Shown here piece by piece: positions 6,430 through 64,000 of a DNA stretch of 64,000 bases. The stretch lies in IMG/VR virus record IMGVR_UViG_3300017917_003822, positions 62,001 to 126,000 of that record; one strand, 5' to 3'. The notes beneath the pieces are model-generated. The model worked only from the letters and a program-made list of their open reading frames with translations. It did not search any database and was not told the DNA's origin. Numbering within the stretch: the stretch's first letter is position 1; every line of letters begins with the position of its first letter. Both the position numbers and the translations under genes were made by a program.

Positions 6430-7131
6430 ATGCCAAGTGAAAAGACTTATCTAGGTAGGGTAGTTGATATTAGGGATCCTCTTTATCAGGGTAGAGCTAA
6501 GATTGATGTTTTTGGATTTTTTGATGGTATCCCAGTGGAAGATCTCCCATGGGCGGAGCAGATAGCTGGTTTATCTTTTGGTGGAAATTTTGGTGGTGGT
6601 AATATTACCATACCTCGAGTTGGTGCTATAGTCGCTGTTCATTTCGAGGAGGATAACCATTATAAACTCACATACCACTATCTTAAAGAATTTGATCAGA
6701 CACTTTTAGATGAGTTAAAACAAGAAAATTCTTATGAAGGGACACATTCTCTTATCTCAGATTCAGAAGCTCAGCCAGGGGTACTTAAAATGATTTATAC
6801 AAGAAAGAATGGTCTGGTTTTTCAGCTTGGTGATGCGACAATACAACTAGATACTCAGAATGCTGGAACAGATAAGGAGAAACTTAGAATTAAAATAAAG
6901 ATGAATGAAGACGAGATCCGAATGGAAAAGAGTGGAGGAAAGCAGAAGGTTATAGTGAAATCTGAAAATATAGAGCTTGGCGAGGGAGCTGTTGAAAAAC
7001 TGGTTCTGGGTAATAAATTCCTTCAGCTATTTAATCAACACACCCATCCAACTGGTGTTGGACCATCGGGAGTTCCTATTCAGCCCATGGTGGATAATCA
7101 ACACTTAAGTCAGGTATCTAAAACTAAATAA
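6430..7131 (+). CDS. Baseplate central spike (gp5 OB-fold / gpV type)
   Basis: N-terminal GRVVDIRDPLYQGRAKI..LPWA..IPRVGAIVAVHF OB-fold motif. C-terminal FNQHTHP contains the HxH metal-binding tip motif. Confidence 0.85.
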   Translation: MPSEKTYLGRVVDIRDPLYQGRAKIDVFGFFDGIPVEDLPWAEQIAGLSFGGNFGGGNITIPRVGAIVAVHFEEDNHYKLTYHYLKEFDQTLLDELKQENSYEGTHSLISDSEAQPGVLKMIYTRKNGLVFQLGDATIQLDTQNAGTDKEKLRIKIKMNEDEIRMEKSGGKQKVIVKSENIELGEGAVEKLVLGNKFLQLFNQHTHPTGVGPSGVPIQPMVDNQHLSQVSKTK

Positions 7132-12335: not shown

Positions 12336-12707
12336 ATGAGAGAGATTTATAACAGGGATCCATTAGATCCTAACTACAATCCTTATCAATTAGAGACCAC
12401 AGATCCAACAGAGATTTGTATCGGTCAACTTAAAATGCTGCTACTTACTAATAAGGGCGAGGTTTTAGGTGACCCTAAATTTGGACTAAATTTAGAAGAT
12501 TTAATTTTCAACCTCGAACTTTCAGAATCCAGTATAAGAAAAGAACTAGATCTTTCTCTGAGAGTGTATGTCCCTCTTTTTTTAGCACTTGGAGGAACAT
12601 ACGATCTTCAGTTTTATGTCGGTACTCAGAGGGATATTGCAACTCTTGATTTCAGAATACCTGAGGATGGAAAGCTTAGCCCATTGGTTTCACTAAGATT
12701 AACATAA
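12336..12707 (+). CDS. Baseplate wedge subunit (gp25-like)
   Basis: LLLTNKGEVLGDPKFGLNLEDLIF signature. Confidence 0.85.
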   Translation: MREIYNRDPLDPNYNPYQLETTDPTEICIGQLKMLLLTNKGEVLGDPKFGLNLEDLIFNLELSESSIRKELDLSLRVYVPLFLALGGTYDLQFYVGTQRDIATLDFRIPEDGKLSPLVSLRLT

Positions 12708-12716
12708 GTAAAAGAA

Positions 12717-14441
12717 ATGAATATATTTAAGAAAAATAACATCCTTATTAACGGTCTTCTCGGAGATACGTTCAACTTTTTGCAGGCTACCTATAATCAG
12801 ACATCTAATGTCTTTACAGTAGCTTCTGCTTGGGGTCAAATATTATTTGTTCTTCAGAATTTATCACAATTAATTCTTTATTTTATAGAGGATTCGATCA
12901 CTGAATTGAACATGCAGGAAGCAACTAGAGATTACTCAATCCGAAGTTTAGCTAGAATAGCCGGATATGATCCAGGAAGAGCAAATGCAGCACAAGGAGA
13001 AGTTTCTATTTCATGGAATACTAGGGAGGGAGACGTAGGAGGTGGTTCCATCATACTTAGAAACAATAGTCAAATCAGATGTCTTCAGAACGGTAAGGTT
13101 TATTCTTTAATTTTCGGAAGTCCTGAAGTAACTATACCTCTCGTTAGAGGAAACACAATAAGAGTAAAAATAGCACAGGGTACCTTTGAGTCTGCGATAG
13201 TGACCGGAACAGGATTGGCTCTTCAGAGTTTTAATATACCTTCAAGTTCTGGTGCTCTTCTAGACCAGTTTTATGTTGATGTCTATGTTAACGAGGAAAA
13301 ATGGAGAAAATATGATTCACTCTATGATATACCTTTGAATGGGAAAGGATATCTAGTTAAGACTGGAATACAGGAGGGACTTGATATCTATTTTGGAAAC
13401 TCCAATTTTGGAATGGTTCCGCCTAGAGGTTCCAGAATAAGAATAGAATATTTACAGACTGCAGGTGCGGGTGGTAATGCAAATTCAACTAAAGAGACCC
13501 CTTTAACATATAGATTTTCTAGTAACGGTACGGATTTATTTGGAAGAGAGGTTGATGTTAACCTTTATCTGGATATAAAAAATGAAATAGATCCATCATT
13601 CGGAACTAATCCAGAAACGACCAATTTGATTAGGTTGGTTGCACCTAAAACCAGTAGATCTTTCGTTTTTGCTAATGCCGATAATTACGAAGTTTTCTTA
13701 AATAAACTTGGAATATTCTCTCAGATACAGGCTTTTTCGACATTTGATGATGAGTATCTAGACGATGATAATGTCATCTACCTTTATCTAGTTCCTGACA
13801 TTACATTAAATCTTTCCACTAACGAGGATTATTTTAGTGTTCCAGTGGAGGATTTTTTATTGACAGCTCAACAAAAAGCTAGAGTGATTAACCTCATAGA
13901 ACAATCAGGGTCCATGATCGCAACGACGGTTGTTAAGATAGTACAACCAGTTATCGCAAAATATGTTGCTAATGTCGTTCTTGGTATTTTTGAGGGATCT
14001 GATCCTGAAACTATTAAGCAGACAATAAGAAAAAGGATTTCGGAATATATGCTTTCTCTAAAGAGAAGAGACAAGATACCTAAATCCGATTTCATAGCCA
14101 TTATAGAGAGCGTCCCTGGAGTTGATACGGTTTCATTTTTCTTCGTTGGACAGAAGAATGAGGAAAATCAAATAGAGATAAGAAATCTTAGCAATGTTTC
14201 ACAGGCTCAGCTTGACGAGGTTATTGGTATGGATCAATTTGGTGATATTGTTATAGGCAGAAATGAATTGGTTTTACTAAGAGGAGGCTGGACGGATAGA
14301 AATGGAACATTCTACACGGAGTCGATCGTTGAAGGAAAACCTGGACCTCTTAACATAACAATAGCTTCGATAGTCCCTAGAAACTTTAGAAGTGAATTGA
14401 ATGCAGATTTAAAAGCACAGATTATAGCACAGGGATCTTAA
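12717..14441 (+). CDS. Baseplate wedge protein (gp6 / baseplate J-like)
   Basis: ATRDYSIRSLARIAGY, DIYFGNSNFGMVPPRGSRIRIEY...G.GGN and ADNYE motifs; follows gp25. Confidence 0.85.
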   Translation: MNIFKKNNILINGLLGDTFNFLQATYNQTSNVFTVASAWGQILFVLQNLSQLILYFIEDSITELNMQEATRDYSIRSLARIAGYDPGRANAAQGEVSISWNTREGDVGGGSIILRNNSQIRCLQNGKVYSLIFGSPEVTIPLVRGNTIRVKIAQGTFESAIVTGTGLALQSFNIPSSSGALLDQFYVDVYVNEEKWRKYDSLYDIPLNGKGYLVKTGIQEGLDIYFGNSNFGMVPPRGSRIRIEYLQTAGAGGNANSTKETPLTYRFSSNGTDLFGREVDVNLYLDIKNEIDPSFGTNPETTNLIRLVAPKTSRSFVFANADNYEVFLNKLGIFSQIQAFSTFDDEYLDDDNVIYLYLVPDITLNLSTNEDYFSVPVEDFLLTAQQKARVINLIEQSGSMIATTVVKIVQPVIAKYVANVVLGIFEGSDPETIKQTIRKRISEYMLSLKRRDKIPKSDFIAIIESVPGVDTVSFFFVGQKNEENQIEIRNLSNVSQAQLDEVIGMDQFGDIVIGRNELVLLRGGWTDRNGTFYTESIVEGKPGPLNITIASIVPRNFRSELNADLKAQIIAQGS

Positions 14442-14997: not shown

Positions 14998-17900
14998 ATG
15001 GCAAATATAAAACTTAATTTTTTTGGTAAGGATGGGAATCCTCTAAACTTCGACTATATCGGACCAACCGGACCAACTCCTCTTGATTCCAAATTCACAT
15101 ACATAACATCACCATCCGGAGTTTCGAGTAATGGTGACATTATCTTTAATTTTGGGACTAGCACCTTTATTTGGGAATTGTACCCTAGAGATCTTAATAA
15201 TTTCGATCTGACTGCTTGGTATAATGAGGTTAAGGATTTTATCTCGAAGGGAGCTAATGTTTATGTTAATGGCGAAGTTGCAGGACAGCAGAATTTTAAG
15301 TTTAAGATTCAAAGCGTTGCAAAGAACCCTTCTGGGGATTTTATCATCAATGGTCAAAGTGATAATTACGAGGGTCAAAATATAATAAGTCCAAATAATC
15401 AAATCTATTTCACAACGACTTATGAAAATAGGCCAGGTGGTTATTTTAAGGGTAATATCTATTTCGATCCAGTTTCTGCGGGTCTTTATGAGAATGAACA
15501 AATTTTCGTTGTTCAGGAGTTTGAAACTGCTAGCGGCTATCAATATGGATTGCCTCACACTGGGGCAACAGGTTCAACTGGATCACCCAGATGGAGAACC
15601 AGATGGTACAATGATAATTATGGGGAAACCGATGTAACTGACATTATTTTTACTTATGCCATAGAAGATCAACTTGAAGGCGGTGATGGTGAACCTCTAA
15701 TAGTTAATTATCCCAATATGGTACTTCCTGTTGATATTAATTCGGGTGATTATTACCAGAATGGTTTCATACACACAAATCTTGTTAATTCCGAGGCTTT
15801 AGCTATAAATGTTGCTTTAAATGCTTCTGAGGATGCTGAAAACATATATGAGAGAAAGTTAATAGTAGAGGATATTACTACAGGTACACCAGAGAAAATT
15901 ATAGAAATAGATTTCTACGGTCAAATTATAGGTGAGGATGAGAGATTTAAGGTTTTATTAGAGAATCTTGGGCGTGCATTTTATAAGAGCGATTCGGTGA
16001 TCCTAAGAGACCATGATCCGGATGAACCTAGTCCGAACTTTCTTGAGATTAATGAAAAAAGGAAGGAGCTATTAGTAACGGGCGAGGAGATATTTCCCTA
16101 TATAGGTAGTTATAAGGGTTTAATTAATGCTCTTAAATTTTTCGGGTATCAGGATCTTAGAATTAAGGAATATTGGCTAAATTTAAATTATAAAAATCTA
16201 AAATTAGAATCACCTGTACAACAAAATCAATCTTTTCTTAATGCAATAAAATCCCAACAGTCTAAAGGTTATTCATTGAGCTATCAGATTGGTGATATTC
16301 TAGATAACGAGAATAGTGGAAAGTATAGGCTGACCCAGACATATGGACCCGATAAAAACGGTAACTATGTTCTAAATGTCACATCGGAGGATTCATTAAT
16401 CCCAAGCAGAACATATAAGAAAACTGCTCTCTTTGGTTTATACTATGATTTAAATAAAGTTACAGATGATACCGATGCTTTCGGGTATCCGGTTGTTAAT
16501 GACGCTTTTAAATTTACTCAAGAGGAGGTTTTAATTAAGATTTTTGCACTGAAGGAGAGATTAAAGAGAGACTATCTTCCGTTAAATGCAAGAATTATAG
16601 ATATTACCGGAGAAGGTGTTTATTTCACTATCTACAACACCAAGTCATGGACGGATGTTATGGAAAGGTCTGATATAAACTCTGGATTTTATTTTGATTT
16701 TGCACCGAATCCAGATTTTGGATTTTTGGAAGATCTTAGAAATTTCTCAACTAGACCACTGCCATCAGGAATCCAGACACCAAGTTTATATAGCAACTCA
16801 TATCAAACTGAAGTTAATTTTATAGGTGGGACCGGGAGTGCTATAGGATTCAATGGAAATTTCCCCGGTGGAATGACAGGACCAAATCCAACTATATTTG
16901 TAAATTCCGGTAACACGTATCAATTTAATGTTGTTGATAGTGGAAATTTTGGCTATGATTTTTATTTAACAACTGATCCTCTTTTGACTCAGATTGATCC
17001 TTTGGGAGTTATGAACAATGGAGCAACTGGTGGAAATTCGATCACGTGGTACGTTAACCCTGAACAGACGTCCCCGGTTTATTATTATTCCAGTAATAAT
17101 CCTTCATTATTAAATGGAGTCATTACTGTTCTACCTGCTAAATTATCGGATCTTGGTAATATAGTGGATCCATTATCAAATCAGCAGATTTACACCAAGG
17201 AGCAGAATGATTCTATGATGGCAGCAATAGAAAATTTCTATGAACTTAAACAGAATGGAAAAATTCTTGAGCTAGGTGACGATGATTTCGATCCTACTGC
17301 ATATATTGATCCTGTTACAGGTTCTCAGTATCAGCTTCCTTTGGGGATGCCAGTCATACTGGAGCTTGTTCTAGATGTTTGGGAATGGAATGAACTTAAT
17401 ATTAACTGGAACGCCTTAACTATACCAACCTATAAAGTTGGTGACGTTGTACAAGTTAGACAGCTTGATAATTTTTTCTATGGTGTGTTTGGAACTGTTA
17501 CATCAGCAAGTTATTCCACTGGTGAATATACTGTTTTATTAGATCCCCCTTATAATGTACCTCAGAATTTTGCAGAAGCGGATCTTCTCTCATCTATACA
17601 GACCTATAATTTGTTAACATGGGAAAATATAGATTTTTCGAATTCTGTTGAGATCGAGTGGATTGTTAACAAGACGACGACACAATCTGGATCACCTTAT
17701 AATTTTGAATTTAGAGGTCCAATAGCGAGCTTTTATAGGCTTGCACACTTCTTACCCTACACTGGAGAATATAAGGTCATATGCAACATATATGATGCAT
17801 TTAACGCAAAAACTACTGTAATTAAAGATCGAGTTATTAGAGTTGAACCTAAAACGATCGATATTGATTCATGGACCAGATACAGAGAAGCCGAAAGATA

Positions 17901-19917
17901 CCTTTGGGACAATGTTGATAGAGGATGGGATTCATATAACGGAATCTGGGAATATCCAGCTGAGGGTGAAACCATTGAGATTGTTGAAAAATCAATACCT
18001 AGCGAAATCCTAGACTTTGCTACATACGGAAATAAATCGGAGGAGGGACAGAGTCTCTTTGTAAAATCTCCGACTGATCCGATTGGAGCTACTGGAGAAT
18101 TCTCTTTTACCCAATCAATTACTCAAATTTCTGAAGTTTATTCACTGGAAATATTTCCTGGACAATATGGATATGTTAATATCTCCACCGCATCACCTCA
18201 TGGTCTTGTTGATGGTGATGAGGTAACTATATCGGGATCAATTCCTCAACTTAATGGAAGATGGGTTGTTGGTGTTACTGGATCACTTACGACATTTAAA
18301 ATTCCGACTGCTTTTGATCTTTCCTGGAGTGGGATAAATTTAGAAACCTCACCAGTTAACCGATACGTTGCGGATCCTTTAATCTATCCAAATCAAAGGT
18401 TTACTGGAGCTGGTAACGTAACTGTTTTTGTTGGAGGAAGACCGATAGGAACAGCGGAAACTGGTGATACACTTTATAACACAGCTAACGCTATAACATC
18501 GGCTATAAATTCATTACAAACTTATCCTGATTATTTTGCTTCTTGCTTAGATCCTTCATCAGATCCAGTGAAGATATTAATTTCTGCACCTGATGATCTT
18601 GGTTCCGATCAAAATGGGGTTTCTTTTGATGTTGAAGTTTCAGGATCACTAAGTTTAGTTTCTTTATCTCCGTCCTTAACTGGTGGAGTTAGTCCAACCG
18701 AAACATATGTTTACTGGTCGGAGAATGATCCCGTACAACCTAACGAGAATCTTAAATACTGGGGAACGAAGAGACTCAACTGGGAGGTTTTCACAGATAG
18801 CACATGGGAAGATGCTTATGCACATAGCTGGTTTGATTTCGAATTTAACAACGATTGGCTGGGTGGATATGAGCTTCATACTATATTACCTGGTGATTAT
18901 GTTAAGATTAGCACCGCTAATTCGACATATCCATTTCCCGTTGGCGTAACTTTTTCAAGCGGACTGAGTGGTTTAACGTTACAGGAAGTTGCTGACCAGC
19001 TTAATAACTCCAATGAGCCACATATCACTAATTTTTATTATCGACCAATGCCTAGTGAATCGGGTTCTTTGAGTGCTATAGCTGCTCCAATAAACTTGGA
19101 TATAACTAATAATTTCCTGATTAATAGTAACTTCCAACCACCTCCATCATTAAATGGTGGAAGTCAGTTATTGATTGCCCAATTTGGATATACTGGAGGT
19201 ACACCTATTACAACAACAACATCGACGTCGACAACAACAACATCGACAACAACAACATCGACAACATCGACAACAACAACGACCACTATAGCTCCAACAA
19301 CGACGTCAACAACATCGACAACAACTATAGCTCCGACAACGACAACAACAACTGTCGATCCTTGTTTACTTGCAGGTACAGCTAGTATGGTTTATCCTAC
19401 TACAACGACAACAACATCGACATCGACAACAACGACAACAACAACGCCTATAATACTTTGTCAATGTTACACTCTGACTTGTACCCCTGATCCATTCCCT
19501 GCTCCGTACGTCGGATCTACCACTTTCCAATATGTTGACTGTTCCGGTGATACTCAAACAGTTTTCGTTAATGATGGATCACCAATAGACGTATGTGCTC
19601 AGGAAAATAGTGTCATAAGAATCGGAGGGGATCCTGGAACCATTGACATAAGCCCGTTTGATTGTTGCGATACCTCTCTTTACTTAGCATACAGATCGGT
19701 CTCGTCGGATCCGTCTGATGCTTGTGGTTTTATAACCAGCGAAGTATGCTATGTACAAGGATCTTATACCAGGGTATTTAATGATGCCGGAGGAACTTCA
19801 CCGTTCGTAGGAGGGAATGCATATTGGAAAGTCTCCAGAGCAATTGATTCGTATAGTGTCAGTATGCTAATAGACAACTTTGGATATCCGGTAGGTCTGT
19901 CATCACTTTGTTTTTAA
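14998..19917 (+). CDS. Large baseplate wedge protein (gp7/tail-I-like) with accessory domains and C-terminal poly-Thr and Cys-rich regions
   Basis: IFPYIGSYKGLINALKFFGY..IKEYW tail-I/gp7-like motif. Also cupredoxin-like, SH3/KOW-like and PKD-like segments, then Thr tracts. Confidence 0.6.
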   Translation: MANIKLNFFGKDGNPLNFDYIGPTGPTPLDSKFTYITSPSGVSSNGDIIFNFGTSTFIWELYPRDLNNFDLTAWYNEVKDFISKGANVYVNGEVAGQQNFKFKIQSVAKNPSGDFIINGQSDNYEGQNIISPNNQIYFTTTYENRPGGYFKGNIYFDPVSAGLYENEQIFVVQEFETASGYQYGLPHTGATGSTGSPRWRTRWYNDNYGETDVTDIIFTYAIEDQLEGGDGEPLIVNYPNMVLPVDINSGDYYQNGFIHTNLVNSEALAINVALNASEDAENIYERKLIVEDITTGTPEKIIEIDFYGQIIGEDERFKVLLENLGRAFYKSDSVILRDHDPDEPSPNFLEINEKRKELLVTGEEIFPYIGSYKGLINALKFFGYQDLRIKEYWLNLNYKNLKLESPVQQNQSFLNAIKSQQSKGYSLSYQIGDILDNENSGKYRLTQTYGPDKNGNYVLNVTSEDSLIPSRTYKKTALFGLYYDLNKVTDDTDAFGYPVVNDAFKFTQEEVLIKIFALKERLKRDYLPLNARIIDITGEGVYFTIYNTKSWTDVMERSDINSGFYFDFAPNPDFGFLEDLRNFSTRPLPSGIQTPSLYSNSYQTEVNFIGGTGSAIGFNGNFPGGMTGPNPTIFVNSGNTYQFNVVDSGNFGYDFYLTTDPLLTQIDPLGVMNNGATGGNSITWYVNPEQTSPVYYYSSNNPSLLNGVITVLPAKLSDLGNIVDPLSNQQIYTKEQNDSMMAAIENFYELKQNGKILELGDDDFDPTAYIDPVTGSQYQLPLGMPVILELVLDVWEWNELNINWNALTIPTYKVGDVVQVRQLDNFFYGVFGTVTSASYSTGEYTVLLDPPYNVPQNFAEADLLSSIQTYNLLTWENIDFSNSVEIEWIVNKTTTQSGSPYNFEFRGPIASFYRLAHFLPYTGEYKVICNIYDAFNAKTTVIKDRVIRVEPKTIDIDSWTRYREAERYLWDNVDRGWDSYNGIWEYPAEGETIEIVEKSIPSEILDFATYGNKSEEGQSLFVKSPTDPIGATGEFSFTQSITQISEVYSLEIFPGQYGYVNISTASPHGLVDGDEVTISGSIPQLNGRWVVGVTGSLTTFKIPTAFDLSWSGINLETSPVNRYVADPLIYPNQRFTGAGNVTVFVGGRPIGTAETGDTLYNTANAITSAINSLQTYPDYFASCLDPSSDPVKILISAPDDLGSDQNGVSFDVEVSGSLSLVSLSPSLTGGVSPTETYVYWSENDPVQPNENLKYWGTKRLNWEVFTDSTWEDAYAHSWFDFEFNNDWLGGYELHTILPGDYVKISTANSTYPFPVGVTFSSGLSGLTLQEVADQLNNSNEPHITNFYYRPMPSESGSLSAIAAPINLDITNNFLINSNFQPPPSLNGGSQLLIAQFGYTGGTPITTTTSTSTTTTSTTTTSTTSTTTTTTIAPTTTSTTSTTTIAPTTTTTTVDPCLLAGTASMVYPTTTTTTSTSTTTTTTTPIILCQCYTLTCTPDPFPAPYVGSTTFQYVDCSGDTQTVFVNDGSPIDVCAQENSVIRIGGDPGTIDISPFDCCDTSLYLAYRSVSSDPSDACGFITSEVCYVQGSYTRVFNDAGGTSPFVGGNAYWKVSRAIDSYSVSMLIDNFGYPVGLSSLCF
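19210..19446 (+). repeat. Mucin-like poly-Thr/Ser tracts (ACA/ACG/TCG-rich)
   Basis: Encodes TTTTSTSTTTTSTTTTSTTSTTTTTTIAPTTT... and TTTTTTSTSTTTTTTT. Confidence 0.95.
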
Positions 19918-19960
19918 ATGGAATGAATATATAAAAATAGTAATATAAAAGAACAATATA

Positions 19961-20575
19961 ATGGCATCAGCACTCATAACATTAACAACCGCAGGGACTG
20001 GAACTGGACCATTCGACCTTTATTCTAATATTGGTGGATATGCTTCACCCTTCGAATCTGGGGTTGATAAATCATCTCTTGTTTCTGGGTACGTTTCAAA
20101 TTTGGTTCCAAATGGAACAACTGTAATTAGAGTCCAGTCAACAAGTTTACAGTGCACAAATTATGTTGATATCTCGGTAACTGGTATAACCACAACCACA
20201 ACCACCACAACCACAACGGCAGCTCCCACAAATTCAAGCCTAAAAAATAATAGCGGCACATCAATAAGTGGAACTTTTGTTTTTTCCGTTAAAATAGGAT
20301 CTGGTAGTTTTAGTACTTTCTTTTCAGTGTCTACGACAATTGCACCCGGGGCTACTTATAACTTTTTCCAGTCATATTATCCAGGTTCATTCCAAACTAC
20401 CGGTAACACGTTCAGAGTCCAAGTTTTCTCATCTAGTGGAATAACTTCTTCGAATTATATACAGATGTTTGCTGGATCTACTAGTAATATAGGATTCTTT
20501 AGTGGAACGAATCCTGCTACAGCTGAAACTTTTTCTTCTGGTAACCAATTTGCAATTAACATACAATATTATTAA
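19961..20575 (+). CDS. Small virion-associated protein with a poly-Thr linker
   Basis: 204 aa: two beta-rich domains joined by a T10 tract at 20189-20218. Confidence 0.6.
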   Translation: MASALITLTTAGTGTGPFDLYSNIGGYASPFESGVDKSSLVSGYVSNLVPNGTTVIRVQSTSLQCTNYVDISVTGITTTTTTTTTTAAPTNSSLKNNSGTSISGTFVFSVKIGSGSFSTFFSVSTTIAPGATYNFFQSYYPGSFQTTGNTFRVQVFSSSGITSSNYIQMFAGSTSNIGFFSGTNPATAETFSSGNQFAINIQYY

Positions 20576-20580
20576 TAAAC

Positions 20581-20608
20581 GAAACAGTTACCTTATTTCG
20601 ACTATAAT
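20581..20608 (+). promoter_or_regulatory. Putative early/middle promoter GAAAC-N17-TATAAT
   Basis: Upstream of the glycosyltransferase; the same spacing recurs at 52331 and 60859. Confidence 0.45.
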
Positions 20609-20628
20609 TAATATCTAAAAGAGATATT

Positions 20629-21594
20629 ATGATAAACAAAAAAATGACATTTATCTGTGCACAACCAGACGTGCCTTATTTTCATTGGCAGGTGGAGGTT
20701 CTGATTCATAACTTCATGAAAAATGGGATAAATCCCAACTGGATTGAGATTCTATTTGCTTATGATGAGACTATATCAAATGAAGGTTTATCGTTGGCTA
20801 GAAAATATCCTTTTGTTAGGTTTTTTTTCTATAAAAAAACTCCATGTGATAATTATGGGTATATCCCAATTCTGAGACCAGATATTTTGGAACAACATTT
20901 TATTAAATATCCCCAACTTTCGAGTGAGTTTATTTTCTATCACGACTCGGATATAATCTTCAGAGAACTCCCGGATTTTAATTCATTGCTTAATGATGAT
21001 ATTTGGTATCTTAGTGATACGGTTTCTTATATTGGCTCAGAGTACATAAAAAGTAAATCCGATAAGATTTTAACGGACATGTGCAACATCGCTGGAATAT
21101 CTAGAGATTTAGTTGAGCAGAATAACAAAAACTCGGGAGGAGCTCAGTATCTTATGAAGAATATAGATCATCTTTTTTGGAGAGATGTAAAATTCGTTTC
21201 TCTTGATCTTTATAAATATATGCTTGATGCCGAAATCGAGGAGAGAAAAACACTAACTGAAGATCAGTTAAAAACATACAACCCGATCCAGAAATGGTGC
21301 GCAGATATGTGGGGGGTTTTGTGGTGTGGTCTAAAAAGAGGAAACGAGATCAGATTATCTGATGAACTTGGATTTAGTTGGGGAAGTAGCTGGGGTACAC
21401 ATGAGTGGCAAAAGCATAAAATAATGCATAATGCTGGTGTTTCGGACAACTGTAACGGGAAATGTTTTCATAAGGCGGAGTTTATGAATAAATCCCCCTG
21501 GGATCATGATTTTTCTACAATAGATCCGAATAGTAACAGCTACAACTACATTCAGGCTATTTTATATGCTAAAGAAATGAGATCAAAGCTCTAG
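20629..21594 (+). CDS. GT-A glycosyltransferase, GT95/GT96-like (peptidyl O-glycosyltransferase family)
   Basis: DxD motif FYHDSDIIFR. The blocks PYFHWQVEVLIHNF, YIPILRP and KWCADMW parallel the YFDWQ, YxxxNKP and WxxEM blocks of plant SGT1/HPAT (recognised by eye). Confidence 0.7.
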   Translation: MINKKMTFICAQPDVPYFHWQVEVLIHNFMKNGINPNWIEILFAYDETISNEGLSLARKYPFVRFFFYKKTPCDNYGYIPILRPDILEQHFIKYPQLSSEFIFYHDSDIIFRELPDFNSLLNDDIWYLSDTVSYIGSEYIKSKSDKILTDMCNIAGISRDLVEQNNKNSGGAQYLMKNIDHLFWRDVKFVSLDLYKYMLDAEIEERKTLTEDQLKTYNPIQKWCADMWGVLWCGLKRGNEIRLSDELGFSWGSSWGTHEWQKHKIMHNAGVSDNCNGKCFHKAEFMNKSPWDHDFSTIDPNSNSYNYIQAILYAKEMRSKL

Positions 21595-21646: not shown

Positions 21647-23455
21647 ATGGCAGATATTCAGATAGGTGTAAATCAAGGCGACACCGTTTATTATTTCGAT
21701 CAGAGCGTTGGTTCTGTGGTTTCTAGAGATTGGTTTTTTCCTGGCGGAACTCCAACCGGTGCATCTTCTTTCGGACCAGCGATCCAATATAATAGCGTTA
21801 ATTCAGTCGGATATAATGCTTCTCTGCTTGTTACAGATGCCGCTGGAGTAACTGCTGGAATAACTAAACCTAATATCATCGTCGTTTTTCCGGAGTCCCC
21901 TAATCCGTCCATCTCAGTAACACCTTCTACACTTACCATGGGTATTAATGTAAATTATAGCGTGGTTGGATCGACAGGAACGGGGTTTGTTTCGTATTCT
22001 TGGAATATCCCAGGTCTCGGAGCAACATCGGGACCTTTGCTCTCTTCGGTTTTACAACAGTATAATGATTGGTTTACTCTAACTGGTACATATAGCGGCT
22101 TACCTGGAGCTTCCTATGTTGCCCCAGTTACATTAACAGTTACAACCACTGTGGGAAACACATTTAACGTTAATACAAACGCAACATATTTTAAATATGG
22201 TCCGATTGAGGAGATAAATTATAACGACTCATCATTTCCTTATGGTGTCAGCGGACCCTATTATCTACCAACGTTGATTGGTCCCAATTCTGGAACAATT
22301 GGCCTCGGAGGAAGCAATCCTGTTATAAAAATAGATCAGAGTTATGGTGCTACAGCTTGGAATAATTCTTATTTTCATTCAACAACAGAGAATTGTTACT
22401 TTTGGCCAAATAACGAGGATTTAAATTCGAGTGGATATCTTACTGGCACATTTACCCCGATACAATTTAAGACTATATTTTCAGGTACTGTTCTAAGTTT
22501 AGCTGGGGCTTCTTACACCTCAGATCCTGCTATAAATTCTGGTAATTATATAAAACCTGGATTTATTAGCACCAATTTGAATGACACCTTTTATATAACA
22601 GATTATCCTGCTGGAGGAATCTTAAACCAAGCAACCACTGGAGGTAGAGATTGGAGCGATGATGCTATACGATCCTATTTATCTAACACATACTACCTTT
22701 CTAACTCATCAAAATATATAGAAAATTCTGGATTTGTTTCAAAAGATGTTCCTAGATCAGATTTGGCAACGGTTGCTGACTATCTGAATGGTGGGTATAA
22801 TTTAAACGGCGGATACGGAACAAATAGTCATGGACCCTGTATACCAACTTCATATTTTTTTGAAACTGTTAAATCCGCACCAGGTTTAACTGTGGATGCA
22901 ACAGTAACGGTTCTTTGTGAAAATTCTGGGTCTAATTACTCCTATAATGTTGTTTTATCTTCACCTGGAGGTACCGGTAACAGTCCAGATAAATATCTAA
23001 CGACAGTACAAAGCAACTCTAACGGGAAGGGAATAGCTCAGATCCTTAATGAAGCAACAGCTCTAATTGGTTCGACTAATAAGCTTTCTGATTTCATTAT
23101 TTTCGAAGCTGCTAAAGAATATTGCTGTTATCAGGGTGGTGGAGATTCCTCAAATCCTCAATATGATGCACAGAGCTTCAACGGTCTACGTATATCAGTA
23201 ACCAATCCGATAGTTTCAAATACTGGAACATCTCTAGATTCTGGTGGAAGTATAACTGGGTTGAGTCTAACCTGGGGTCCTAACTGGATATCATCAATAC
23301 AGGGTAGTGGATTCTTCCTGTTTGATGTAAAATTAGCTAGTAGCCCAGGATCTTCGACAACGATGATATCCTGGTTGGGAGTAAAGGAAACTATGCGGAT
23401 AGATTACAATGATCCGACCAGATATTTTAGAGGGTGGAAAATTGGTGGAATATAA
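21647..23455 (+). CDS. PKD/Ig-domain virion protein
   Basis: N-terminal GDTVYYFDQSVGSVVSRDWFFPGGTP PKD-type motif and a second Ig-like segment; Gly/Ser/Thr rich. Confidence 0.6.
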   Translation: MADIQIGVNQGDTVYYFDQSVGSVVSRDWFFPGGTPTGASSFGPAIQYNSVNSVGYNASLLVTDAAGVTAGITKPNIIVVFPESPNPSISVTPSTLTMGINVNYSVVGSTGTGFVSYSWNIPGLGATSGPLLSSVLQQYNDWFTLTGTYSGLPGASYVAPVTLTVTTTVGNTFNVNTNATYFKYGPIEEINYNDSSFPYGVSGPYYLPTLIGPNSGTIGLGGSNPVIKIDQSYGATAWNNSYFHSTTENCYFWPNNEDLNSSGYLTGTFTPIQFKTIFSGTVLSLAGASYTSDPAINSGNYIKPGFISTNLNDTFYITDYPAGGILNQATTGGRDWSDDAIRSYLSNTYYLSNSSKYIENSGFVSKDVPRSDLATVADYLNGGYNLNGGYGTNSHGPCIPTSYFFETVKSAPGLTVDATVTVLCENSGSNYSYNVVLSSPGGTGNSPDKYLTTVQSNSNGKGIAQILNEATALIGSTNKLSDFIIFEAAKEYCCYQGGGDSSNPQYDAQSFNGLRISVTNPIVSNTGTSLDSGGSITGLSLTWGPNWISSIQGSGFFLFDVKLASSPGSSTTMISWLGVKETMRIDYNDPTRYFRGWKIGGI

Positions 23456-27560: not shown

Positions 27561-28316
27561 TTATTTAGTATTATTTTTTTCCTCCCACTCATCGAAGACT
27601 TCCTCGATGAGTTTTACTATAGGATCCCTGACTATATCATCATTGGAAAAATACATTGTCCCTATTCCGTCCTTATTTTCAAAGAGCTTAATAACTAGAT
27701 CGAGCGATGATAATTTGGGATTTTTCATATCTATTTGTTTAGTGTCGCCCGTTATGATCATTTTAGAATCCGTACCTATCCTGGTCATAGTGGATCTCAT
27801 GTTTTTCTGAGTTATGTTTTGAGCTTCGTCAACTATTATTATTGAGTTGTCTATCGACCTTCCTCTGATGTATGCGAGAGGTAAAATCTGGATGATACCC
27901 TGATCCAACATAATTTGAGTTAGGCTCTCTCCAATTATTTTATGAAAGTTGTCGAGAAATGAAATCATAAACGGAAACATTTTTTCCTTGAGATCCCCCT
28001 TTAAAAATCCAACCTCTTCTCCCTCCAGCACAGTTACACTCTTAACCAAGAGGATTTTTTTAAATCTTGGGTCCGACTTTAGAAGTTTCAAAGCCTGAGC
28101 ACATGCTAGATAGGTTTTCCCTGTTCCCGCTGGCCCTGATGTAATCGTTATTTTGTTTTCGTTTATGAGATTACTAAGCTTTTTCTGGTTTGTATTCTTG
28201 AATTTGTAATCTATTCTCAGTTTCTGTAAATCAAAATTCTGATTGTTTGCTGTTTGGCATGTAGTAAAATCGGATGTTTCCTTGTCATTGGATTTCTTAG
28301 TTTTGCTTCTTGTCAT
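27561..28316 (-). CDS. phoH: PhoH-family ATPase
   Basis: GPAGTGKTYLA Walker A, LAYIRGRSI, IIVDEAQN, GDTKQID and DIVRD motifs. Confidence 0.95.
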   Translation of the reverse strand: MTRSKTKKSNDKETSDFTTCQTANNQNFDLQKLRIDYKFKNTNQKKLSNLINENKITITSGPAGTGKTYLACAQALKLLKSDPRFKKILLVKSVTVLEGEEVGFLKGDLKEKMFPFMISFLDNFHKIIGESLTQIMLDQGIIQILPLAYIRGRSIDNSIIIVDEAQNITQKNMRSTMTRIGTDSKMIITGDTKQIDMKNPKLSSLDLVIKLFENKDGIGTMYFSNDDIVRDPIVKLIEEVFDEWEEKNNTK

Positions 28317-51056: not shown

Positions 51057-51764
51057 ATGAATTTAGTCGGCATAGACTTTTCTATAAACTCACCAGCATT
51101 TTGTTGTTTAAAGGATGGTAAATACACTTGGGGCTCTGTGACAAGATCTGATAGATCTTCGGAATCACTTTTGAAAAATTCAAAAAAACCATACTTTATA
51201 TTGGAACAAGATGACAATTTTGTTCTAAAGTTCGTAGATAAAAAAGATTTACCCGATGACTATTCGGGAAGGGAGAGAGCTAAAATTGGTTACTTCCTTG
51301 AAATAGTTAATGCTCTTTGGGATTCTATAATTGAAGTGATGGGGCACGATCCGTTCCATGTTGCCATGGAGGGTTTAAGCTTCTCGTCAAATGGAAATGC
51401 ACTTATTGATATTTCGATGGCAACTGGACTACTTAGGGAAAGAATAATTTCCGAGGTGGGTTCAGATTCTTTTCATGTATTTTCTCCAACCACCATTAAA
51501 AAATATGCGGTAAAGGGAAATGCAAAAAAGGATGAATTGTATCATGCTCTTTATAATTTTAAAGAAGATGAAACAAATTTGGAACATTTTGGTAAAATAT
51601 TAGAAACAAACAAAGAGGAGTGGATTACCCCAAGTAAGGTGGTAAATAAACCGATCGATGATATTGTGGACGCAACTTGGATTAATTTATATTTAAAGAA
51701 AGAATTAGGAGAATTTTATGGAATTAAAGGAAATCTTGAAGGAACATCTAAATCAGGCCTCTGA
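51057..51764 (+). CDS. RuvC-like (RNase H fold) nuclease / Holliday junction resolvase
   Basis: LVGIDFSINSPA, VAMEGLSF, SPTTIKK...GNAKK and DDIVDA motifs. Confidence 0.8.
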   Translation: MNLVGIDFSINSPAFCCLKDGKYTWGSVTRSDRSSESLLKNSKKPYFILEQDDNFVLKFVDKKDLPDDYSGRERAKIGYFLEIVNALWDSIIEVMGHDPFHVAMEGLSFSSNGNALIDISMATGLLRERIISEVGSDSFHVFSPTTIKKYAVKGNAKKDELYHALYNFKEDETNLEHFGKILETNKEEWITPSKVVNKPIDDIVDATWINLYLKKELGEFYGIKGNLEGTSKSGL

Positions 51765-52320
51765 CATTTTAAATGACTTCATTAACAACGACGAGTATCT
51801 AAGCTCGGTAGAGGAGGCTGCTCAGACTATAATCACAGCACTACAAAACGGTAATAAAATAATATCAGCAGGTAATGGCGGATCTATGTGTGACGCTATG
51901 CACTTTGCGGAAGAACTATCTGGCAGATGGAGGGAAGACAGAAAACCTCTGGCTGCCATTTCTGTATCAGATCCCTCCCATATAACTTGCGTTGGTAACG
52001 ATTACGGATTTGACCAGATTTTTTCCAGATATCTAGATGCTGTTGGGAACGAAGGTGATGTATTTTTTGGTATAACGACCTCAGGTAATTCTAATAATAT
52101 CACCCGAGCGCTGGTTACTGCCAAGCGTAAAGGTATGAGAACTGTCATACTCACATCAGACAGGCCTGAGAGCGACGTACGATTAAAATTTAATCATCTT
52201 ATTGATAATACCATACTAACACCAAGAAACAAATATGCGGACCGTACGCAAGAACTACATATCAAAATAATACATTCCCTGATTGATATGATAGAGCGAA
52301 AATTGGGATTGAAAAATTAA
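51718..52320 (+). CDS. gmhA: Phosphoheptose (sedoheptulose-7-phosphate) isomerase
   Basis: GNGGSMCDAMHFAEEL, SHITCVGNDYGF, TSGNS and ADRTQELHIKIIH. The catalytic His/Glu/Gln/His set is present. Confidence 0.93.
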   Translation: MELKEILKEHLNQASDILNDFINNDEYLSSVEEAAQTIITALQNGNKIISAGNGGSMCDAMHFAEELSGRWREDRKPLAAISVSDPSHITCVGNDYGFDQIFSRYLDAVGNEGDVFFGITTSGNSNNITRALVTAKRKGMRTVILTSDRPESDVRLKFNHLIDNTILTPRNKYADRTQELHIKIIHSLIDMIERKLGLKN

Positions 52321-62000: not shown

Positions 62001-62020
62001 AAGCCGACTTAGAATAGTAT

Positions 62021-64000
62021 ATGGCTCAATTTCCAATCAATCCCCGAATAGGGCAAGCTTTTCTAGCAGATTCCAAAATATATGTTTGGAGTGGAACTCA
62101 GTGGGTTGCGGCACAGGTTGGAGGGACAGGAGACGGATCATCAGGAACCTCTGGAACTAGTGGAGTTGATGGAAATTTTTATGGATCCTCTGGAACCTCT
62201 GGAACCTCCGGGGTTAATGGATCCAGTGGAACAAGTGGTACACCGGGATCTTCTGGAATATCAGGATCTTTCGGAACAAGTGGATCTAGTGGAACATCAG
62301 GATCTACCGGAAGTCCAGGATCTTCTGGGTCTAGTGGATCTTCTGGTGCTAATGGTTCGTCTGGAACATCAGGAATTAATGGATCCAGTGGAACAAGTGG
62401 CTCGAATGGATCATCAGGAACTTCTGGATCTAGTGGAAGCAGCGGAACTTCAGGCACTAGAGGATCTAGTGGAACTTCGGGTTCTTCGGGAACATCTGGT
62501 GCTAATGGTTCTTCAGGAACATCTGGATCTAATGGATCTTCGGGTGTCAGTGGAATTAATGGTATAGATGGAACTTCTGGATCTAGTGGAACTTCAGGTA
62601 CTAGAGGATCTAGTGGAACTTCTGGTTCTTCAGGAACATCTGGTGCTAATGGTTCTTCAGGAACCTCTGGTGCTAACGGTTCATCGGGTTCATCGGGAGT
62701 TAGTGGAATTAATGGTGTTGATGGAACCTCAGGATCTAGTGGAAGTAGCGGAACTTCAGGTACTGGCGGATCGAGTGGATCTTCGGGTTCTTCCGGAACA
62801 TCTGGCTCTAATGGTTCTTCAGGAACATCTGGTGCTAATGGTTCATCGGGATCTTCGGGTGTCAGTGGAATTAATGGTGTTGATGGAACTTCAGGATCTA
62901 GCGGTACTTCTGGTGTTAATGGCTCTAGTGGAACATCCGGTTCATCAGGATCGTCAGGAACCAGTGGAATCACCGGATCGTCGGGATCTAGTGGATCTTC
63001 GGGTGTCAGTGGAATTAATGGTGTTGATGGAACTTCAGGATCTAGCGGTACTTCTGGTGTTAATGGATCTAGTGGTACTTCGGGATCTGGTGGATCGAGT
63101 GGAACTTCAGGATCTGGTGGATCTAGTGGAACTTCGGGATCTAGAGGATCTTCAGGAACCAGTGGGACAAGTGGATCCTCAGGGTCTAGTGGAGATTCTG
63201 GCTCTAGTGGAACATCCGGTTCATCAGGATCGTCAGGAACCAGTGGAATCACTGGATCGTCGGGATCTAGTGGATCGTCGGGTGTCAGTGGAGTTAATGG
63301 TGTTGATGGAACCTCAGGATCTAGTGGTACCTCTGGTGTTAATGGATCTAGTGGTACTTCGGGATCTGGTGGATCGAGTGGAACTTCAGGATCTAGAGGA
63401 TCTTCGGGAACCAGTGGAACCAGTGGATCTTCAGGATCTAGTGGAGCTTCTGGATCTAGTGGTACCTCCGGTTCTAGTGGTTTATCAGGATCTAGTGGAA
63501 CTTCGGGATCTAGAGGATCTTCGGGAACCAGTGGAACCAGTGGATCTTCAGGATCTAGTGGATCTTCAGGAGTCAGCGGGGTTAACGGTGTTGATGGTTC
63601 TTCCGGATCCAGTGGAACATCCGGAAGTAACGGAACTCCGGGTTCTTCAGGTTCTTCAGGTTCTTCAGGTTCTTCAGGTTCTTCAGGTTCTTCAGGAACT
63701 TCGGGATCTAGAGGATCCAGTGGAACATCTGGTATAAACGGTTCTTCCGGCTCTTCGGGAACGTCAGGGTCCAGTGGAACATCAGGGACAAGAGGAACTA
63801 GCGGAACATCTGGTATAAGTGGAAACGACGCATCTAATTCAGGGAGATGGGAATATTCAAATTCGATTGCACCGACCAATCCAGGCACCAGCAGATTCTG
63901 TACAAATAGTTCTTCTCTAGGATCTGTTAATGTATTAAGTATTAGTATTTACGACATAAACTCGGTGGATTACACTAAATGGTTTCAAGCATCTGACACA
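62021..64000 (+). CDS. Gly-Ser/Thr collagen-like fibre protein, truncated by the window end and absent from the ORF track
   Basis: ATG at 62021 (MAQFPINPRIGQAF..YVWSGTQW) with an open frame to 64000; a long Gly-X-Y region, then a non-repetitive domain (GRWEY..). Confidence 0.85.
   Translation, partial: MAQFPINPRIGQAFLADSKIYVWSGTQWVAAQVGGTGDGSSGTSGTSGVDGNFYGSSGTSGTSGVNGSSGTSGTPGSSGISGSFGTSGSSGTSGSTGSPGSSGSSGSSGANGSSGTSGINGSSGTSGSNGSSGTSGSSGSSGTSGTRGSSGTSGSSGTSGANGSSGTSGSNGSSGVSGINGIDGTSGSSGTSGTRGSSGTSGSSGTSGANGSSGTSGANGSSGSSGVSGINGVDGTSGSSGSSGTSGTGGSSGSSGSSGTSGSNGSSGTSGANGSSGSSGVSGINGVDGTSGSSGTSGVNGSSGTSGSSGSSGTSGITGSSGSSGSSGVSGINGVDGTSGSSGTSGVNGSSGTSGSGGSSGTSGSGGSSGTSGSRGSSGTSGTSGSSGSSGDSGSSGTSGSSGSSGTSGITGSSGSSGSSGVSGVNGVDGTSGSSGTSGVNGSSGTSGSGGSSGTSGSRGSSGTSGTSGSSGSSGASGSSGTSGSSGLSGSSGTSGSRGSSGTSGTSGSSGSSGSSGVSGVNGVDGSSGSSGTSGSNGTPGSSGSSGSSGSSGSSGSSGTSGSRGSSGTSGINGSSGSSGTSGSSGTSGTRGTSGTSGISGNDASNSGRWEYSNSIAPTNPGTSRFCTNSSSLGSVNVLSISIYDINSVDYTKWFQASDT
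62183..63829 (+). repeat. About 183 Gly-X-Y triplets (GSS/GTS/GVS/GIN/GVD), including (GGTTCTTCA)6 at 63641-63694 and larger internal duplications
   Basis: Visible directly; 1647 nt equals 183 x 9 nt. Confidence 0.92.

What the first reader, a model, noticed from the sequence alone, without database searches (positions are those of the whole stretch)
19210..21594. Candidate phage-encoded virion O-glycosylation module: a GT95/GT96-like transferase next to its likely poly-Thr substrates
Seen: the gp7-like baseplate protein ends in mucin-like Thr/Ser tracts, the next protein has a T10 linker, and the gene after that is a DxD glycosyltransferase. Established: plant peptidyl-serine galactosyltransferase SGT1 (GT96) and hydroxyproline arabinosyltransferase HPAT (GT95) glycosylate proteins directly. 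The ORF carries their ordered blocks as I recall them (YFHWQ, YIPILRP, HDSDII, WCADM). Inference: the phage O-glycosylates its own tail proteins with its own enzyme, rather than through the Bacteroidota D-S/T sequon pathway. This could give a glycan coat for shielding, stiffness or adhesion. The Thr tail, the small protein and the GT look like a cassette appended to a core baseplate gene.
Basis: partly seen in the sequence, partly recalled or inferred. Interest (0 to 1): 0.88.

Follow-up and report, generated by a model that had tools for sequence, protein, structure and literature searches.

The report
Phage glycosyltransferase paired with poly-threonine tail proteins
A jumbo phage carries a previously unnamed sugar-adding enzyme directly after two baseplate proteins with long threonine runs, and the same enzyme-plus-threonine-run pairing recurs in very different phages, which suggests a widespread but untested way for phages to sugar-coat their own particles.

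Summary
The big baseplate ORF (14998..19917) ends in two Thr/Ser tracts and a Cys-rich tail. The next ORF (19961..20575) has a T10 linker. The ORF after that (20629..21594) is a soluble GT-A glycosyltransferase with an invariant DxD (AlphaFold pLDDT 95).

The central inference, that the phage enzyme glycosylates the neighbouring poly-Thr tracts, gains strong comparative support:
- Across 39 clusters of homologues, 34 of 38 have an S/T-rich ORF within 3 kb upstream on the same strand. The other flank bins total 4 of 98 (p = 4e-23).
- All 12 isolate phages inspected show the pairing. The Thr-tailed proteins are unrelated to each other: major tail, capsid, Ig-like and baseplate proteins.
- Two close relatives of this phage lack the Thr tail, the small protein and the enzyme together, with synteny otherwise kept.
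- A chromosomal sister clade in Bacteroidota sits in bacteriocin/RiPP clusters, which again points to peptide substrates.

The GT95/GT96 label is not supported. Pfam's HPAT model does not match, and the nearest folds are retaining GT-A enzymes (GT24, GT8, GT6). The family has no Pfam or NCBIfam model and is "unknown function" in PHROGs. I found no paper on it. Nothing is shown biochemically.

The parts
14998..19200 (+). Core of the large baseplate protein (aa 1-1401), placed after a gp6-like wedge gene. This part is shared with relatives that lack the cassette.
   Evidence: The L253 homologue (1394 aa, 61% identity) aligns to aa 5-1399 and then stops. L254 is similar. The gp6-like neighbour at 12717..14441 matches phrog_219. 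The protein's own PHROG, phrog_28177, is of unknown function.
19201..19353 (+). Thr/Ser tract 1 of the baseplate protein (aa 1402-1452, interrupted by two IAP triplets). Proposed O-glycosylation substrate.
19399..19446 (+). Thr/Ser tract 2 of the baseplate protein (aa 1468-1483). Proposed O-glycosylation substrate.
19447..19917 (+). Cys-rich C-terminal domains carried on the Thr stalk (aa 1484-1639; 10 cysteines here). This is the distal module of the appended extension.
   Evidence: Cysteine positions. No Pfam or PHROG match. Absent from L253 and L254.
19961..20575 (+). Small two-domain protein. It has a conserved N-terminal beta domain (aa 1-72), a T10 linker (aa 77-86, nt 20189-20218) and a variable C-terminal beta domain (aa 92-204). 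Proposed second substrate.
   Evidence: AlphaFold model: two all-beta domains, linker aa 75-88 with pLDDT < 50. The N-terminal domain is conserved across the lineage. The C-terminal domain also occurs at the end of the big ORF in L023.
20629..21594 (+). Soluble GT-A glycosyltransferase of an unnamed family (phrog_4417). The DxD motif is at aa 106-108 (nt 20944-20952). His267 is invariant.
   Evidence: phrog_4417 E 5e-61. pLDDT 95.3, pTM 0.91. Foldseek top hits are GT24, GT8 and GT6 enzymes. Invariant residues. No hydrophobic segment (max Kyte-Doolittle 0.67).

Best explanation
ORF 20629..21594 is a cytoplasmic, metal-dependent GT-A glycosyltransferase. It most likely acts on protein and adds sugar from a nucleotide-sugar donor onto the hydroxyls of the threonine (and serine) runs encoded just upstream. 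Those runs are the two tracts in the C-terminal extension of the large baseplate protein and the T10 linker of the small two-domain protein. Modification would happen before or during tail assembly. The likely product is a mucin-like glycosylated stalk that holds small Cys-rich or beta-sandwich distal domains away from the baseplate.

Shown here: the fold, the conserved DxD, the lack of a membrane anchor, the strong and polar genetic linkage to Thr-rich ORFs, and the joint presence or absence of the cassette.

Inferred: the enzyme-substrate relation; a retaining (alpha-linking) mechanism, from the nearest folds; and the role of the glycan (extension, protease resistance, shielding or adhesion). 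The donor sugar is unknown.
For: 1. Enzyme. AlphaFold gives pLDDT 95.3. Foldseek against PDB finds GT-A enzymes: the UGGT catalytic domain 7zle at E 3.5e-7, WbbM, XXYLT1, the Skp1 alpha-GalT 6mw5, LARGE1, alpha-1,3-GalT and LgtC. BFVD hits are GT8-like viral enzymes. D106, D108 and H267 are invariant across 57 diverse members. There is no TM segment or signal peptide.

2. Linkage. The analysis covered 164 viral and phage loci grouped into 39 clusters at 80% identity. An S/T tract lies on the same strand within 3 kb upstream in 34 of 38 clusters. The other bins gave 1/35, 3/33 and 0/30, and the opposite strand gave 0. Fisher p = 3.6e-23. All nine clusters at 60% identity show the pairing. Most apparent negatives carry interrupted Thr repeats.

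3. The Thr-tailed neighbours are not homologous to each other:
- phiFL1A major tail and major head proteins
- PLE3 gp08 and Semele gp075
- phiCTP1 tail tube and the SAC12B Ig-domain protein
- VPE25 and Staphylococcus phage RQ1
- phage 1706, TPWB06 and bIL285 major tail proteins, and the MS-confirmed structural protein gp051 of LP65
- Chryseobacterium phage MA9V-3

4. Natural experiment. Five relatives of the baseplate gene have both Thr tail and enzyme. Two (L253, L254) have neither, with the flanking genes kept.

5. In the window, the only Thr-tract ORFs in 64 kb are these two.

6. The family has peptide substrates elsewhere too. A Bacteroidota chromosomal clade lies beside C39-peptidase ABC exporters, HlyD, LanC-like and radical-SAM genes, and double-glycine-leader precursor peptides. 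Other members are fused to second GT domains.
Against: No biochemical or proteomic evidence exists for any member of this family, and I found no publication on it. Gene adjacency is not proof of an enzyme-substrate pair. One viral clade (L024, L026, L027, L069) has the enzyme with no S/T-rich ORF within 6 kb. In bIL285 the Thr-tailed tail protein lies 1.3 kb downstream rather than upstream. The clusters are not fully independent phylogenetically. The nearest solved folds have TM-scores of only about 0.45-0.5 at about 10% identity, so donor, acceptor and stereochemistry cannot be read off them.
Confidence: 0.75

Rival explanations
1. The enzyme glycosylates something other than virion protein, such as host envelope polysaccharide, teichoic acid, LPS or phage DNA. 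On this reading it sits near Thr-rich genes only because both travel in the structural module.
For: Phage glycosyltransferases are classically known for DNA glucosylation and serotype conversion (reviewed in PMC12619734). The nearest folds include polysaccharide and LPS enzymes such as WbbM and LgtC. The window also encodes a GmhA-like heptose-pathway isomerase.
Against: The partner ORFs share only the Thr tract, not homology or a fixed position in the module. Flanking bins of the same structural modules lack Thr tracts. The enzyme and the Thr tail are lost together in L253 and L254. There is no membrane anchor. The cellular sister clade sits in peptide (RiPP) clusters, not polysaccharide loci.
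Confidence: 0.1
2. The Thr tracts are plain flexible linkers that are never modified. The GT-like protein is then a structural or assembly factor, or an inactive enzyme.
For: Thr/Pro-rich linkers exist without glycosylation. The small protein's T10 is predicted to be disordered.
Against: The catalytic DxD and His267 are invariant over a family of more than 800 representatives, which argues for a conserved active site. The tight pairing of the enzyme with Thr tracts would be left unexplained.
Confidence: 0.07
3. The enzyme is a true member of, or a recent transfer from, the plant GT95/GT96 (HPAT/SGT1) families.
For: Both are protein-directed enzymes. GT95 is predicted to be GT-A-like (PMC8476585). 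One of 57 family members touches Pfam HPAT at E = 0.23.
Against: The window protein does not match PF23452 at E <= 1. The single weak hit is one among 21 unrelated families, each hit once. There is no type II anchor. The family is abundant in phages and Bacteroidota. Structural neighbours are GT24, GT8 and GT6.
Confidence: 0.05

Closest known systems
Virion glycosylation in mycobacteriophages (Che8, Corndog, Myrna; Freeman et al. 2023, Cell Host Microbe 31:1216). The paper was not held. It is cited through PMC12619734, PMC10877033 and PMC13313380, and from my own knowledge.
   Same: Phage-encoded cytoplasmic glycosyltransferases modify the phage's own structural proteins. In the Gram-positive relatives found here the targets would likewise be C-terminal tails of capsid and tail-tube subunits (phiFL1A, 1706, phiCTP1).
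   Different: The enzyme family is different: no mycobacteriophage is among the 77 tblastn hits. The proposed acceptor is a mucin-like poly-Thr run. In this window the carriers are baseplate proteins, not capsid or tube. Hosts are Bacteroidota-type and Bacillota rather than actinobacteria. Nothing is shown experimentally.
Retaining GT-A glycosyltransferases: GT24 (UGGT catalytic domain, 7zle), GT8 (XXYLT1 4wlm, LgtC 1g9r), GT6 (alpha-1,3-GalT) and the Skp1 alpha-galactosyltransferase 6mw5
   Same: They share the GT-A fold, a DxD metal site and a conserved downstream His. Several of them act on proteins or protein-bound glycans.
   Different: Identity is only about 8-13% and TM-scores are about 0.4-0.5. 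There is no Pfam or NCBIfam match. Membership in any of these CAZy families is not established.
Mucin-type O-glycosylation (GT27 ppGalNAc-transferases) and the O-glycosylated Thr/Pro linkers of secreted cellulases
   Same: This is how the system is proposed to work: dense sugar on Ser/Thr runs makes an extended, protease-resistant stalk between folded domains.
   Different: No lectin domain and no GT2/GT27 signature were detected. The proposed reaction is cytoplasmic and bacterial, not secretory. This is an analogy only, from established knowledge.
Plant GT95 (HPAT) and GT96 (SGT1) peptidyl glycosyltransferases
   Same: They transfer sugar directly onto repetitive structural proteins.
   Different: There is no detectable sequence relationship through Pfam HPAT. 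They are Golgi membrane proteins, and their acceptors are Hyp or Ser in extensin motifs.
Glycocin and other RiPP glycosyltransferases (SunS-type, GT2)
   Same: The Bacteroidota sister clade of this family sits in clusters with double-glycine-leader peptides, a C39 ABC exporter and LanC-like genes.
   Different: The GT family is different. No product is known, and the link is by gene neighbourhood only.

Membership tests
GT-A fold, metal-dependent nucleotide-sugar glycosyltransferase | Single Rossmann-like alpha/beta/alpha GT-A fold | tested here: met
   AlphaFold pLDDT 95.3, pTM 0.91. 248 PDB matches at E <= 1e-3, and every one of the 50 listed is a glycosyltransferase.
GT-A fold, metal-dependent nucleotide-sugar glycosyltransferase | Conserved DxD motif after the fourth strand | tested here: met
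   D106 and D108 are invariant in 57 sequences down to about 33% identity. They lie between strands E102-104 and E109-111.
GT-A fold, metal-dependent nucleotide-sugar glycosyltransferase | Third metal ligand (His) and transferase activity | tested here: inconclusive
   H267 is invariant. Its geometry could not be measured and activity cannot be tested here.
PHROG phrog_4417 (unknown function) | Full-length profile match | tested here: met
   E 5.4e-61, residues 6-314 on profile positions 1-291 of 293.
CAZy GT95/GT96 (HPAT / SGT1) | Sequence match to the HPAT family model (Pfam PF23452) | tested here: not met
   No hit at E <= 1 for the window protein. One of 57 members hits at E = 0.23, at noise level.
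CAZy GT95/GT96 (HPAT / SGT1) | Membrane-anchored Golgi enzyme | tested here: not met
   Maximum 19-residue Kyte-Doolittle hydropathy is 0.67, and the N-terminus runs straight into strand 1.
CAZy GT95/GT96 (HPAT / SGT1) | Profile-profile or structural similarity to a GT95/GT96 member | not testable with these tools
   No GT95/GT96 sequence or structure could be obtained. The PDB search returned none.
Phage virion O-glycosylation system (mycobacteriophage type) | Phage-encoded glycosyltransferase in or next to virion structural genes | tested here: met
   The gene lies inside the baseplate module. In relatives it is next to tail-tube or capsid genes.
Phage virion O-glycosylation system (mycobacteriophage type) | Enzyme homologous to the mycobacteriophage glycosyltransferases | tested here: not met
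   No Mycobacterium phage is among the 77 records hit by tblastn.
Phage virion O-glycosylation system (mycobacteriophage type) | Glycans demonstrated on virion proteins | not testable with these tools
   This needs glycoproteomics or glycan staining.
T4 gp7-type baseplate wedge protein (for ORF 14998..19917) | Sequence or profile similarity to gp7 | tested here: inconclusive
   Only the position after a gp6-like gene supports it. PHROG gives an unannotated family, Pfam gives nothing and a PDB sequence search gives nothing.

The most novel reading that the evidence does not exclude
This is one member of a large, unrecognised family of peptide- and protein-directed glycosyltransferases. The family defines a dedicated 'poly-threonine plus enzyme' O-glycosylation module used by phages of Bacillota, Bacteroidota and aquatic jumbo phages to build mucin-like glycan stalks or tails on capsid, tail-tube and baseplate proteins. 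A bacterial sister clade glycosylates exported RiPP peptides. If this holds, virion glycosylation is common well beyond actinobacteriophages, and poly-Thr acts as a portable glycosylation tag.
Probability: 0.6. Interest if true: 0.85.

Novelty: new variant of a known kind. Interest (0 to 1): 0.75.

Why it matters
Self-glycosylation of phage particles has so far been shown only for some mycobacteriophages, where it alters antibody recognition. A second, unrelated enzyme family is tied here to an easily recognisable acceptor (poly-Thr). It occurs in dairy, enterococcal, staphylococcal and clostridial phages and in environmental jumbo phages. That would make virion glycosylation a general phage trait. 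It bears on phage therapy (immune recognition, stability), on dairy phage biology and on host recognition.

It would also provide a simple enzyme-plus-tag pair for making glycoproteins in the bacterial cytoplasm. In addition it would give a function to a family with more than 800 representative clusters that is at present 'hypothetical' everywhere. The claim is directly testable in laboratory strains of Lactococcus lactis or Lacticaseibacillus casei.

Tried and rejected
- Pfam, NCBIfam and a PDB sequence search on the enzyme gave nothing.
- A family profile searched against PDB sequences returned only TAL-effector repeats. That is a 29-residue chance resemblance multiplied by the repeats, and each stretch is insignificant on its own. 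I rejected it.
- A Pfam scan of 57 members gave no recurrent family.
- A Foldseek search with the small-protein model gave no match at E <= 1e-3, so its domains stay unassigned beyond 'beta-sandwich-like'.
- The small protein and the big protein's tail are not detectably similar to each other in this window.
- The gp7 identity of the big ORF could not be confirmed.
- The promoter/terminator scan was uninformative: 33 promoter-like sites against 38 expected.
- Ten literature searches found no paper on this family or on poly-Thr tails of phage proteins. The Freeman 2023 paper is not held. The genome papers for SAC12B and Semele mention neither glycosylation nor threonine.
- A direct comparison with GT95/GT96 sequences could not be made, because none could be fetched and typing them from memory is not acceptable.
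- My first, strict Thr-tract threshold gave 18 false negatives and was replaced.


Full report
**What is in the window**

The region lies in a plus-strand block of tail and baseplate genes of a T4-like myovirus:
- a gp5-like hub at 6430
- a gp25-like gene at 12336
- a gp6-like wedge gene at 12717..14441 (phrog_219, E 8e-31)
- tail-fibre-like genes from 40912 onward

The window is part of a 270,629-bp uncultured viral contig, IMGVR_UViG_3300017917_003822. Its large baseplate protein has distant relatives only in jumbo phages of Bacteroidota, namely Prevotella Lak phages and Chryseobacterium and Flavobacterium phages. This makes a Bacteroidota host plausible but not shown.

- The 1639-aa protein carries two Thr/Ser tracts (aa 1402-1452 and 1468-1483). 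A tail follows with 11 of its 13 cysteines.
- The 204-aa protein has ten consecutive Thr codons.
- The 321-aa protein carries HDSDII.
- No other ORF in the 64 kb has such a tract.

**The enzyme**

It has no Pfam, NCBIfam or PDB sequence match. It belongs to phrog_4417, 'unknown function'. The family is large. The word-indexed search found 1144 relatives, all unnamed. The exhaustive search found 829 representative clusters at E <= 1e-3.

An AlphaFold model built on 42 homologues is very confident (pLDDT 95.3, pTM 0.91). Foldseek places it among GT-A glycosyltransferases. The best matches are:
- the catalytic domain of UDP-glucose:glycoprotein glucosyltransferase (GT24)
- WbbM
- the GT8 enzymes XXYLT1, LARGE1 and LgtC
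- the Skp1 alpha-galactosyltransferase
- GT6 alpha-1,3-galactosyltransferase

TM-scores are about 0.4-0.5 and identity is about 10%. Viral structure matches point the same way. D106, D108 and H267 are invariant in a 57-sequence alignment that reaches 33% identity. The protein has no hydrophobic segment. It is therefore a soluble, presumably Mn-dependent enzyme of the cytoplasm. Its nearest folds are mostly retaining enzymes, so an alpha linkage is a reasonable guess but only a guess.

**The GT95/GT96 label**

They are the conserved core of this family. I could not verify that they occur in the plant enzymes.

The Pfam copy used includes the HPAT family model PF23452. The window protein does not match it at E <= 1. 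Among 57 family members, one touches it at E = 0.23, alongside 20 unrelated families each hit once. GT95 is only predicted to be GT-A-like, and GT96 has been predicted to have a different fold (PMC8476585). I therefore do not file this protein under GT95/GT96. A profile-profile test remains to be done.

**Linkage to poly-Thr genes**

This is the main result. The first three isolate phages I opened were unrelated to each other: an Enterococcus siphovirus, a Lactobacillus casei prophage and a Lactobacillus plantarum Herelleviridae myovirus. In each, the gene immediately upstream of the homologue ends in a long Thr run.

I then fetched 80 viral contigs around relatives of the window enzyme and 80 around relatives of the Gram-positive form. 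All six frames were scanned for 20-residue windows with at least 14 Ser+Thr. After collapsing to 39 clusters at 80% enzyme identity, the counts were:

| Position relative to the enzyme gene | Clusters with a tract, same strand |
|---|---|
| 3 kb upstream | 34 of 38 |
| 3-6 kb upstream | 1 of 35 |
| 0-3 kb downstream | 3 of 33 |
| 3-6 kb downstream | 0 of 30 |
| Opposite strand, any bin | 0 |

Fisher p = 3.6e-23. All nine clusters at 60% identity show the pairing. Most loci missed by a stricter threshold carry interrupted repeats such as TTTTTTVSP or TTSP. One viral clade (L024, L026, L027, L069) is a true exception.

Further isolates all fit:
- phiCTP1 tail tube and the SAC12B Ig-domain protein
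- VPE25 and Staphylococcus phage RQ1
- Lactococcus phages 1706 and bIL285, Arcanobacterium phage TPWB06 and LP65
- Chryseobacterium phage MA9V-3

LP65's Thr-rich gp051 is annotated as a structural protein confirmed by mass spectrometry. The partner proteins are not homologous to each other. They are major tail, major head, Ig-like, baseplate and 950-aa Cys-rich proteins, and the Thr tract is the one feature they share. In phiFL1A both the capsid and the tail-tube proteins end in Thr runs. That mirrors the two glycosylated proteins of mycobacteriophages.

**The cassette**

A search with the first 1380 residues of the baseplate protein found seven related contigs. Five have the Thr tail and the enzyme. 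Two have neither.

In L253 the homologue (61% identity) aligns to residues 5-1399 and stops exactly where the window protein continues into its first Thr tract. The next gene in L253 is the homologue of window ORF 21647..23455. L254 behaves in the same way.

The small protein is modular. Its N-terminal domain is conserved across the lineage. A disordered Thr linker follows (pLDDT < 50 at aa 75-88), then a variable C-terminal beta domain. In L023 that C-terminal domain sits at the end of the big ORF instead.

**An independent hint from bacteria**

In bacterial genomes the family is common in chromosomes of Chitinophaga, Pedobacter, Mucilaginibacter and Sphingobacterium. There it is a 480-620-aa protein with a second, GT-like C-terminal domain. 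These copies form their own clade and are not next to poly-Thr ORFs.

Their neighbours are bacteriocin-type genes instead:
- C39-peptidase ABC exporters in 25 loci
- HlyD
- two kinds of LanC-like protein
- radical-SAM enzymes

Several loci encode short peptides with a double-glycine leader. One of them has a core that ends in a Thr/Pro-rich tail. This supports the view that the whole family works on peptide or protein acceptors.

**Mechanism and limits**

The most likely picture is this. Virion proteins are made in the cytoplasm. They cannot reach the periplasmic general O-glycosylation machinery of Bacteroidota (established knowledge). The phage therefore brings its own soluble transferase, which decorates Thr runs that serve as portable acceptor tags. 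By analogy with mucins and cellulase linkers, the glycan would stiffen and protect the stalks that present distal domains.

None of this is shown. The donor, the linkage, the occupancy and the biological role are all open. I put 0.75 on the enzyme-substrate relation.

**Known or new**

Phage virion glycosylation by phage enzymes is known for mycobacteriophages (Freeman et al. 2023, cited). The enzyme family found here is unrelated to those by tblastn. It is unannotated in every library searched, and it did not appear in ten full-text searches. I rate it a new variant of a known kind.

Noticed in passing
L173:1-10936, L203:1-10897 and about 50 further loci among L173-L244: In Bacteroidota chromosomes a two-domain form of this glycosyltransferase lies in RiPP/bacteriocin-like clusters. 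The neighbours are a C39-peptidase ABC exporter, HlyD, LanC-like proteins, radical SAM enzymes and a methyltransferase. This may be an unrecognised class of glycosylated peptides.
   Followed up: partly
L173:1188-1379; L177:841-1038 and 1191-1394; L197:2139-2333; L201:1272-1472; L206:10604-10780: Short ORFs with double-glycine leaders next to the two-domain enzyme. The L173 and L177 cores end in Thr/Pro-rich tails, so they are candidate precursor peptides.
   Followed up: partly
L165:4734-4889 (VPE25); L167:4611-4928 (Staphylococcus phage RQ1); L257:3720-3926 (Arcanobacterium phage TPWB06): The poly-Thr segment lies in a short ORF that overlaps the end of the preceding capsid or major-tail gene in another frame. 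This could be a programmed frameshift that gives only some subunits a Thr tail, or an indel error in the ACA repeats.
   Followed up: no
window 51718-52320 (+): A GmhA-like D-sedoheptulose-7-phosphate isomerase (NCBIfam NF001628, E 8e-70, just under the equivalog cut-off). This is the first step of activated-heptose synthesis. A link to the donor sugar of the glycosyltransferase is pure speculation.
   Followed up: partly
window 58253-60313 (+): A 686-aa protein that combines an RNA-ligase-like N-terminal part with a nicotinamide-nucleotide adenylyltransferase-like segment.
   Followed up: no
window 27561-28316 (-): A PhoH-like gene (phrog_170, E 1e-67). Among the ORFs scanned, it is the only one with a family match on the minus strand inside the plus-strand structural block.
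   Followed up: no
window 62001-64000: GC content rises to 47.7% against about 36% elsewhere. Long ORFs overlap here on both strands (62179..63888 minus, 62568..63737 plus). No tRNA was found in the window.
   Followed up: no
L046:9126-12950; L036:3359-7651; L042:3660-7646: In related aquatic phages, the ORFs a few kb downstream of the enzyme consist largely of Gly-Thr-Ser / Gly-Ser-Ser triplet repeats. These look like collagen-like fibre proteins.
   Followed up: no
L023:5007-5348 versus window 20231-20563: The C-terminal domain of the small protein is found at the end of the big baseplate ORF in a relative. The distal domains on the Thr stalks are therefore shuffled between the two carriers.
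   Followed up: partly
window about 21050-21150 (enzyme aa 139-173): A 29-residue stretch of the family profile resembles the TAL-effector repeat unit. This produced a misleading E = 6e-8 hit in the PDB search through repeat summation. I judge it a chance resemblance.
   Followed up: yes
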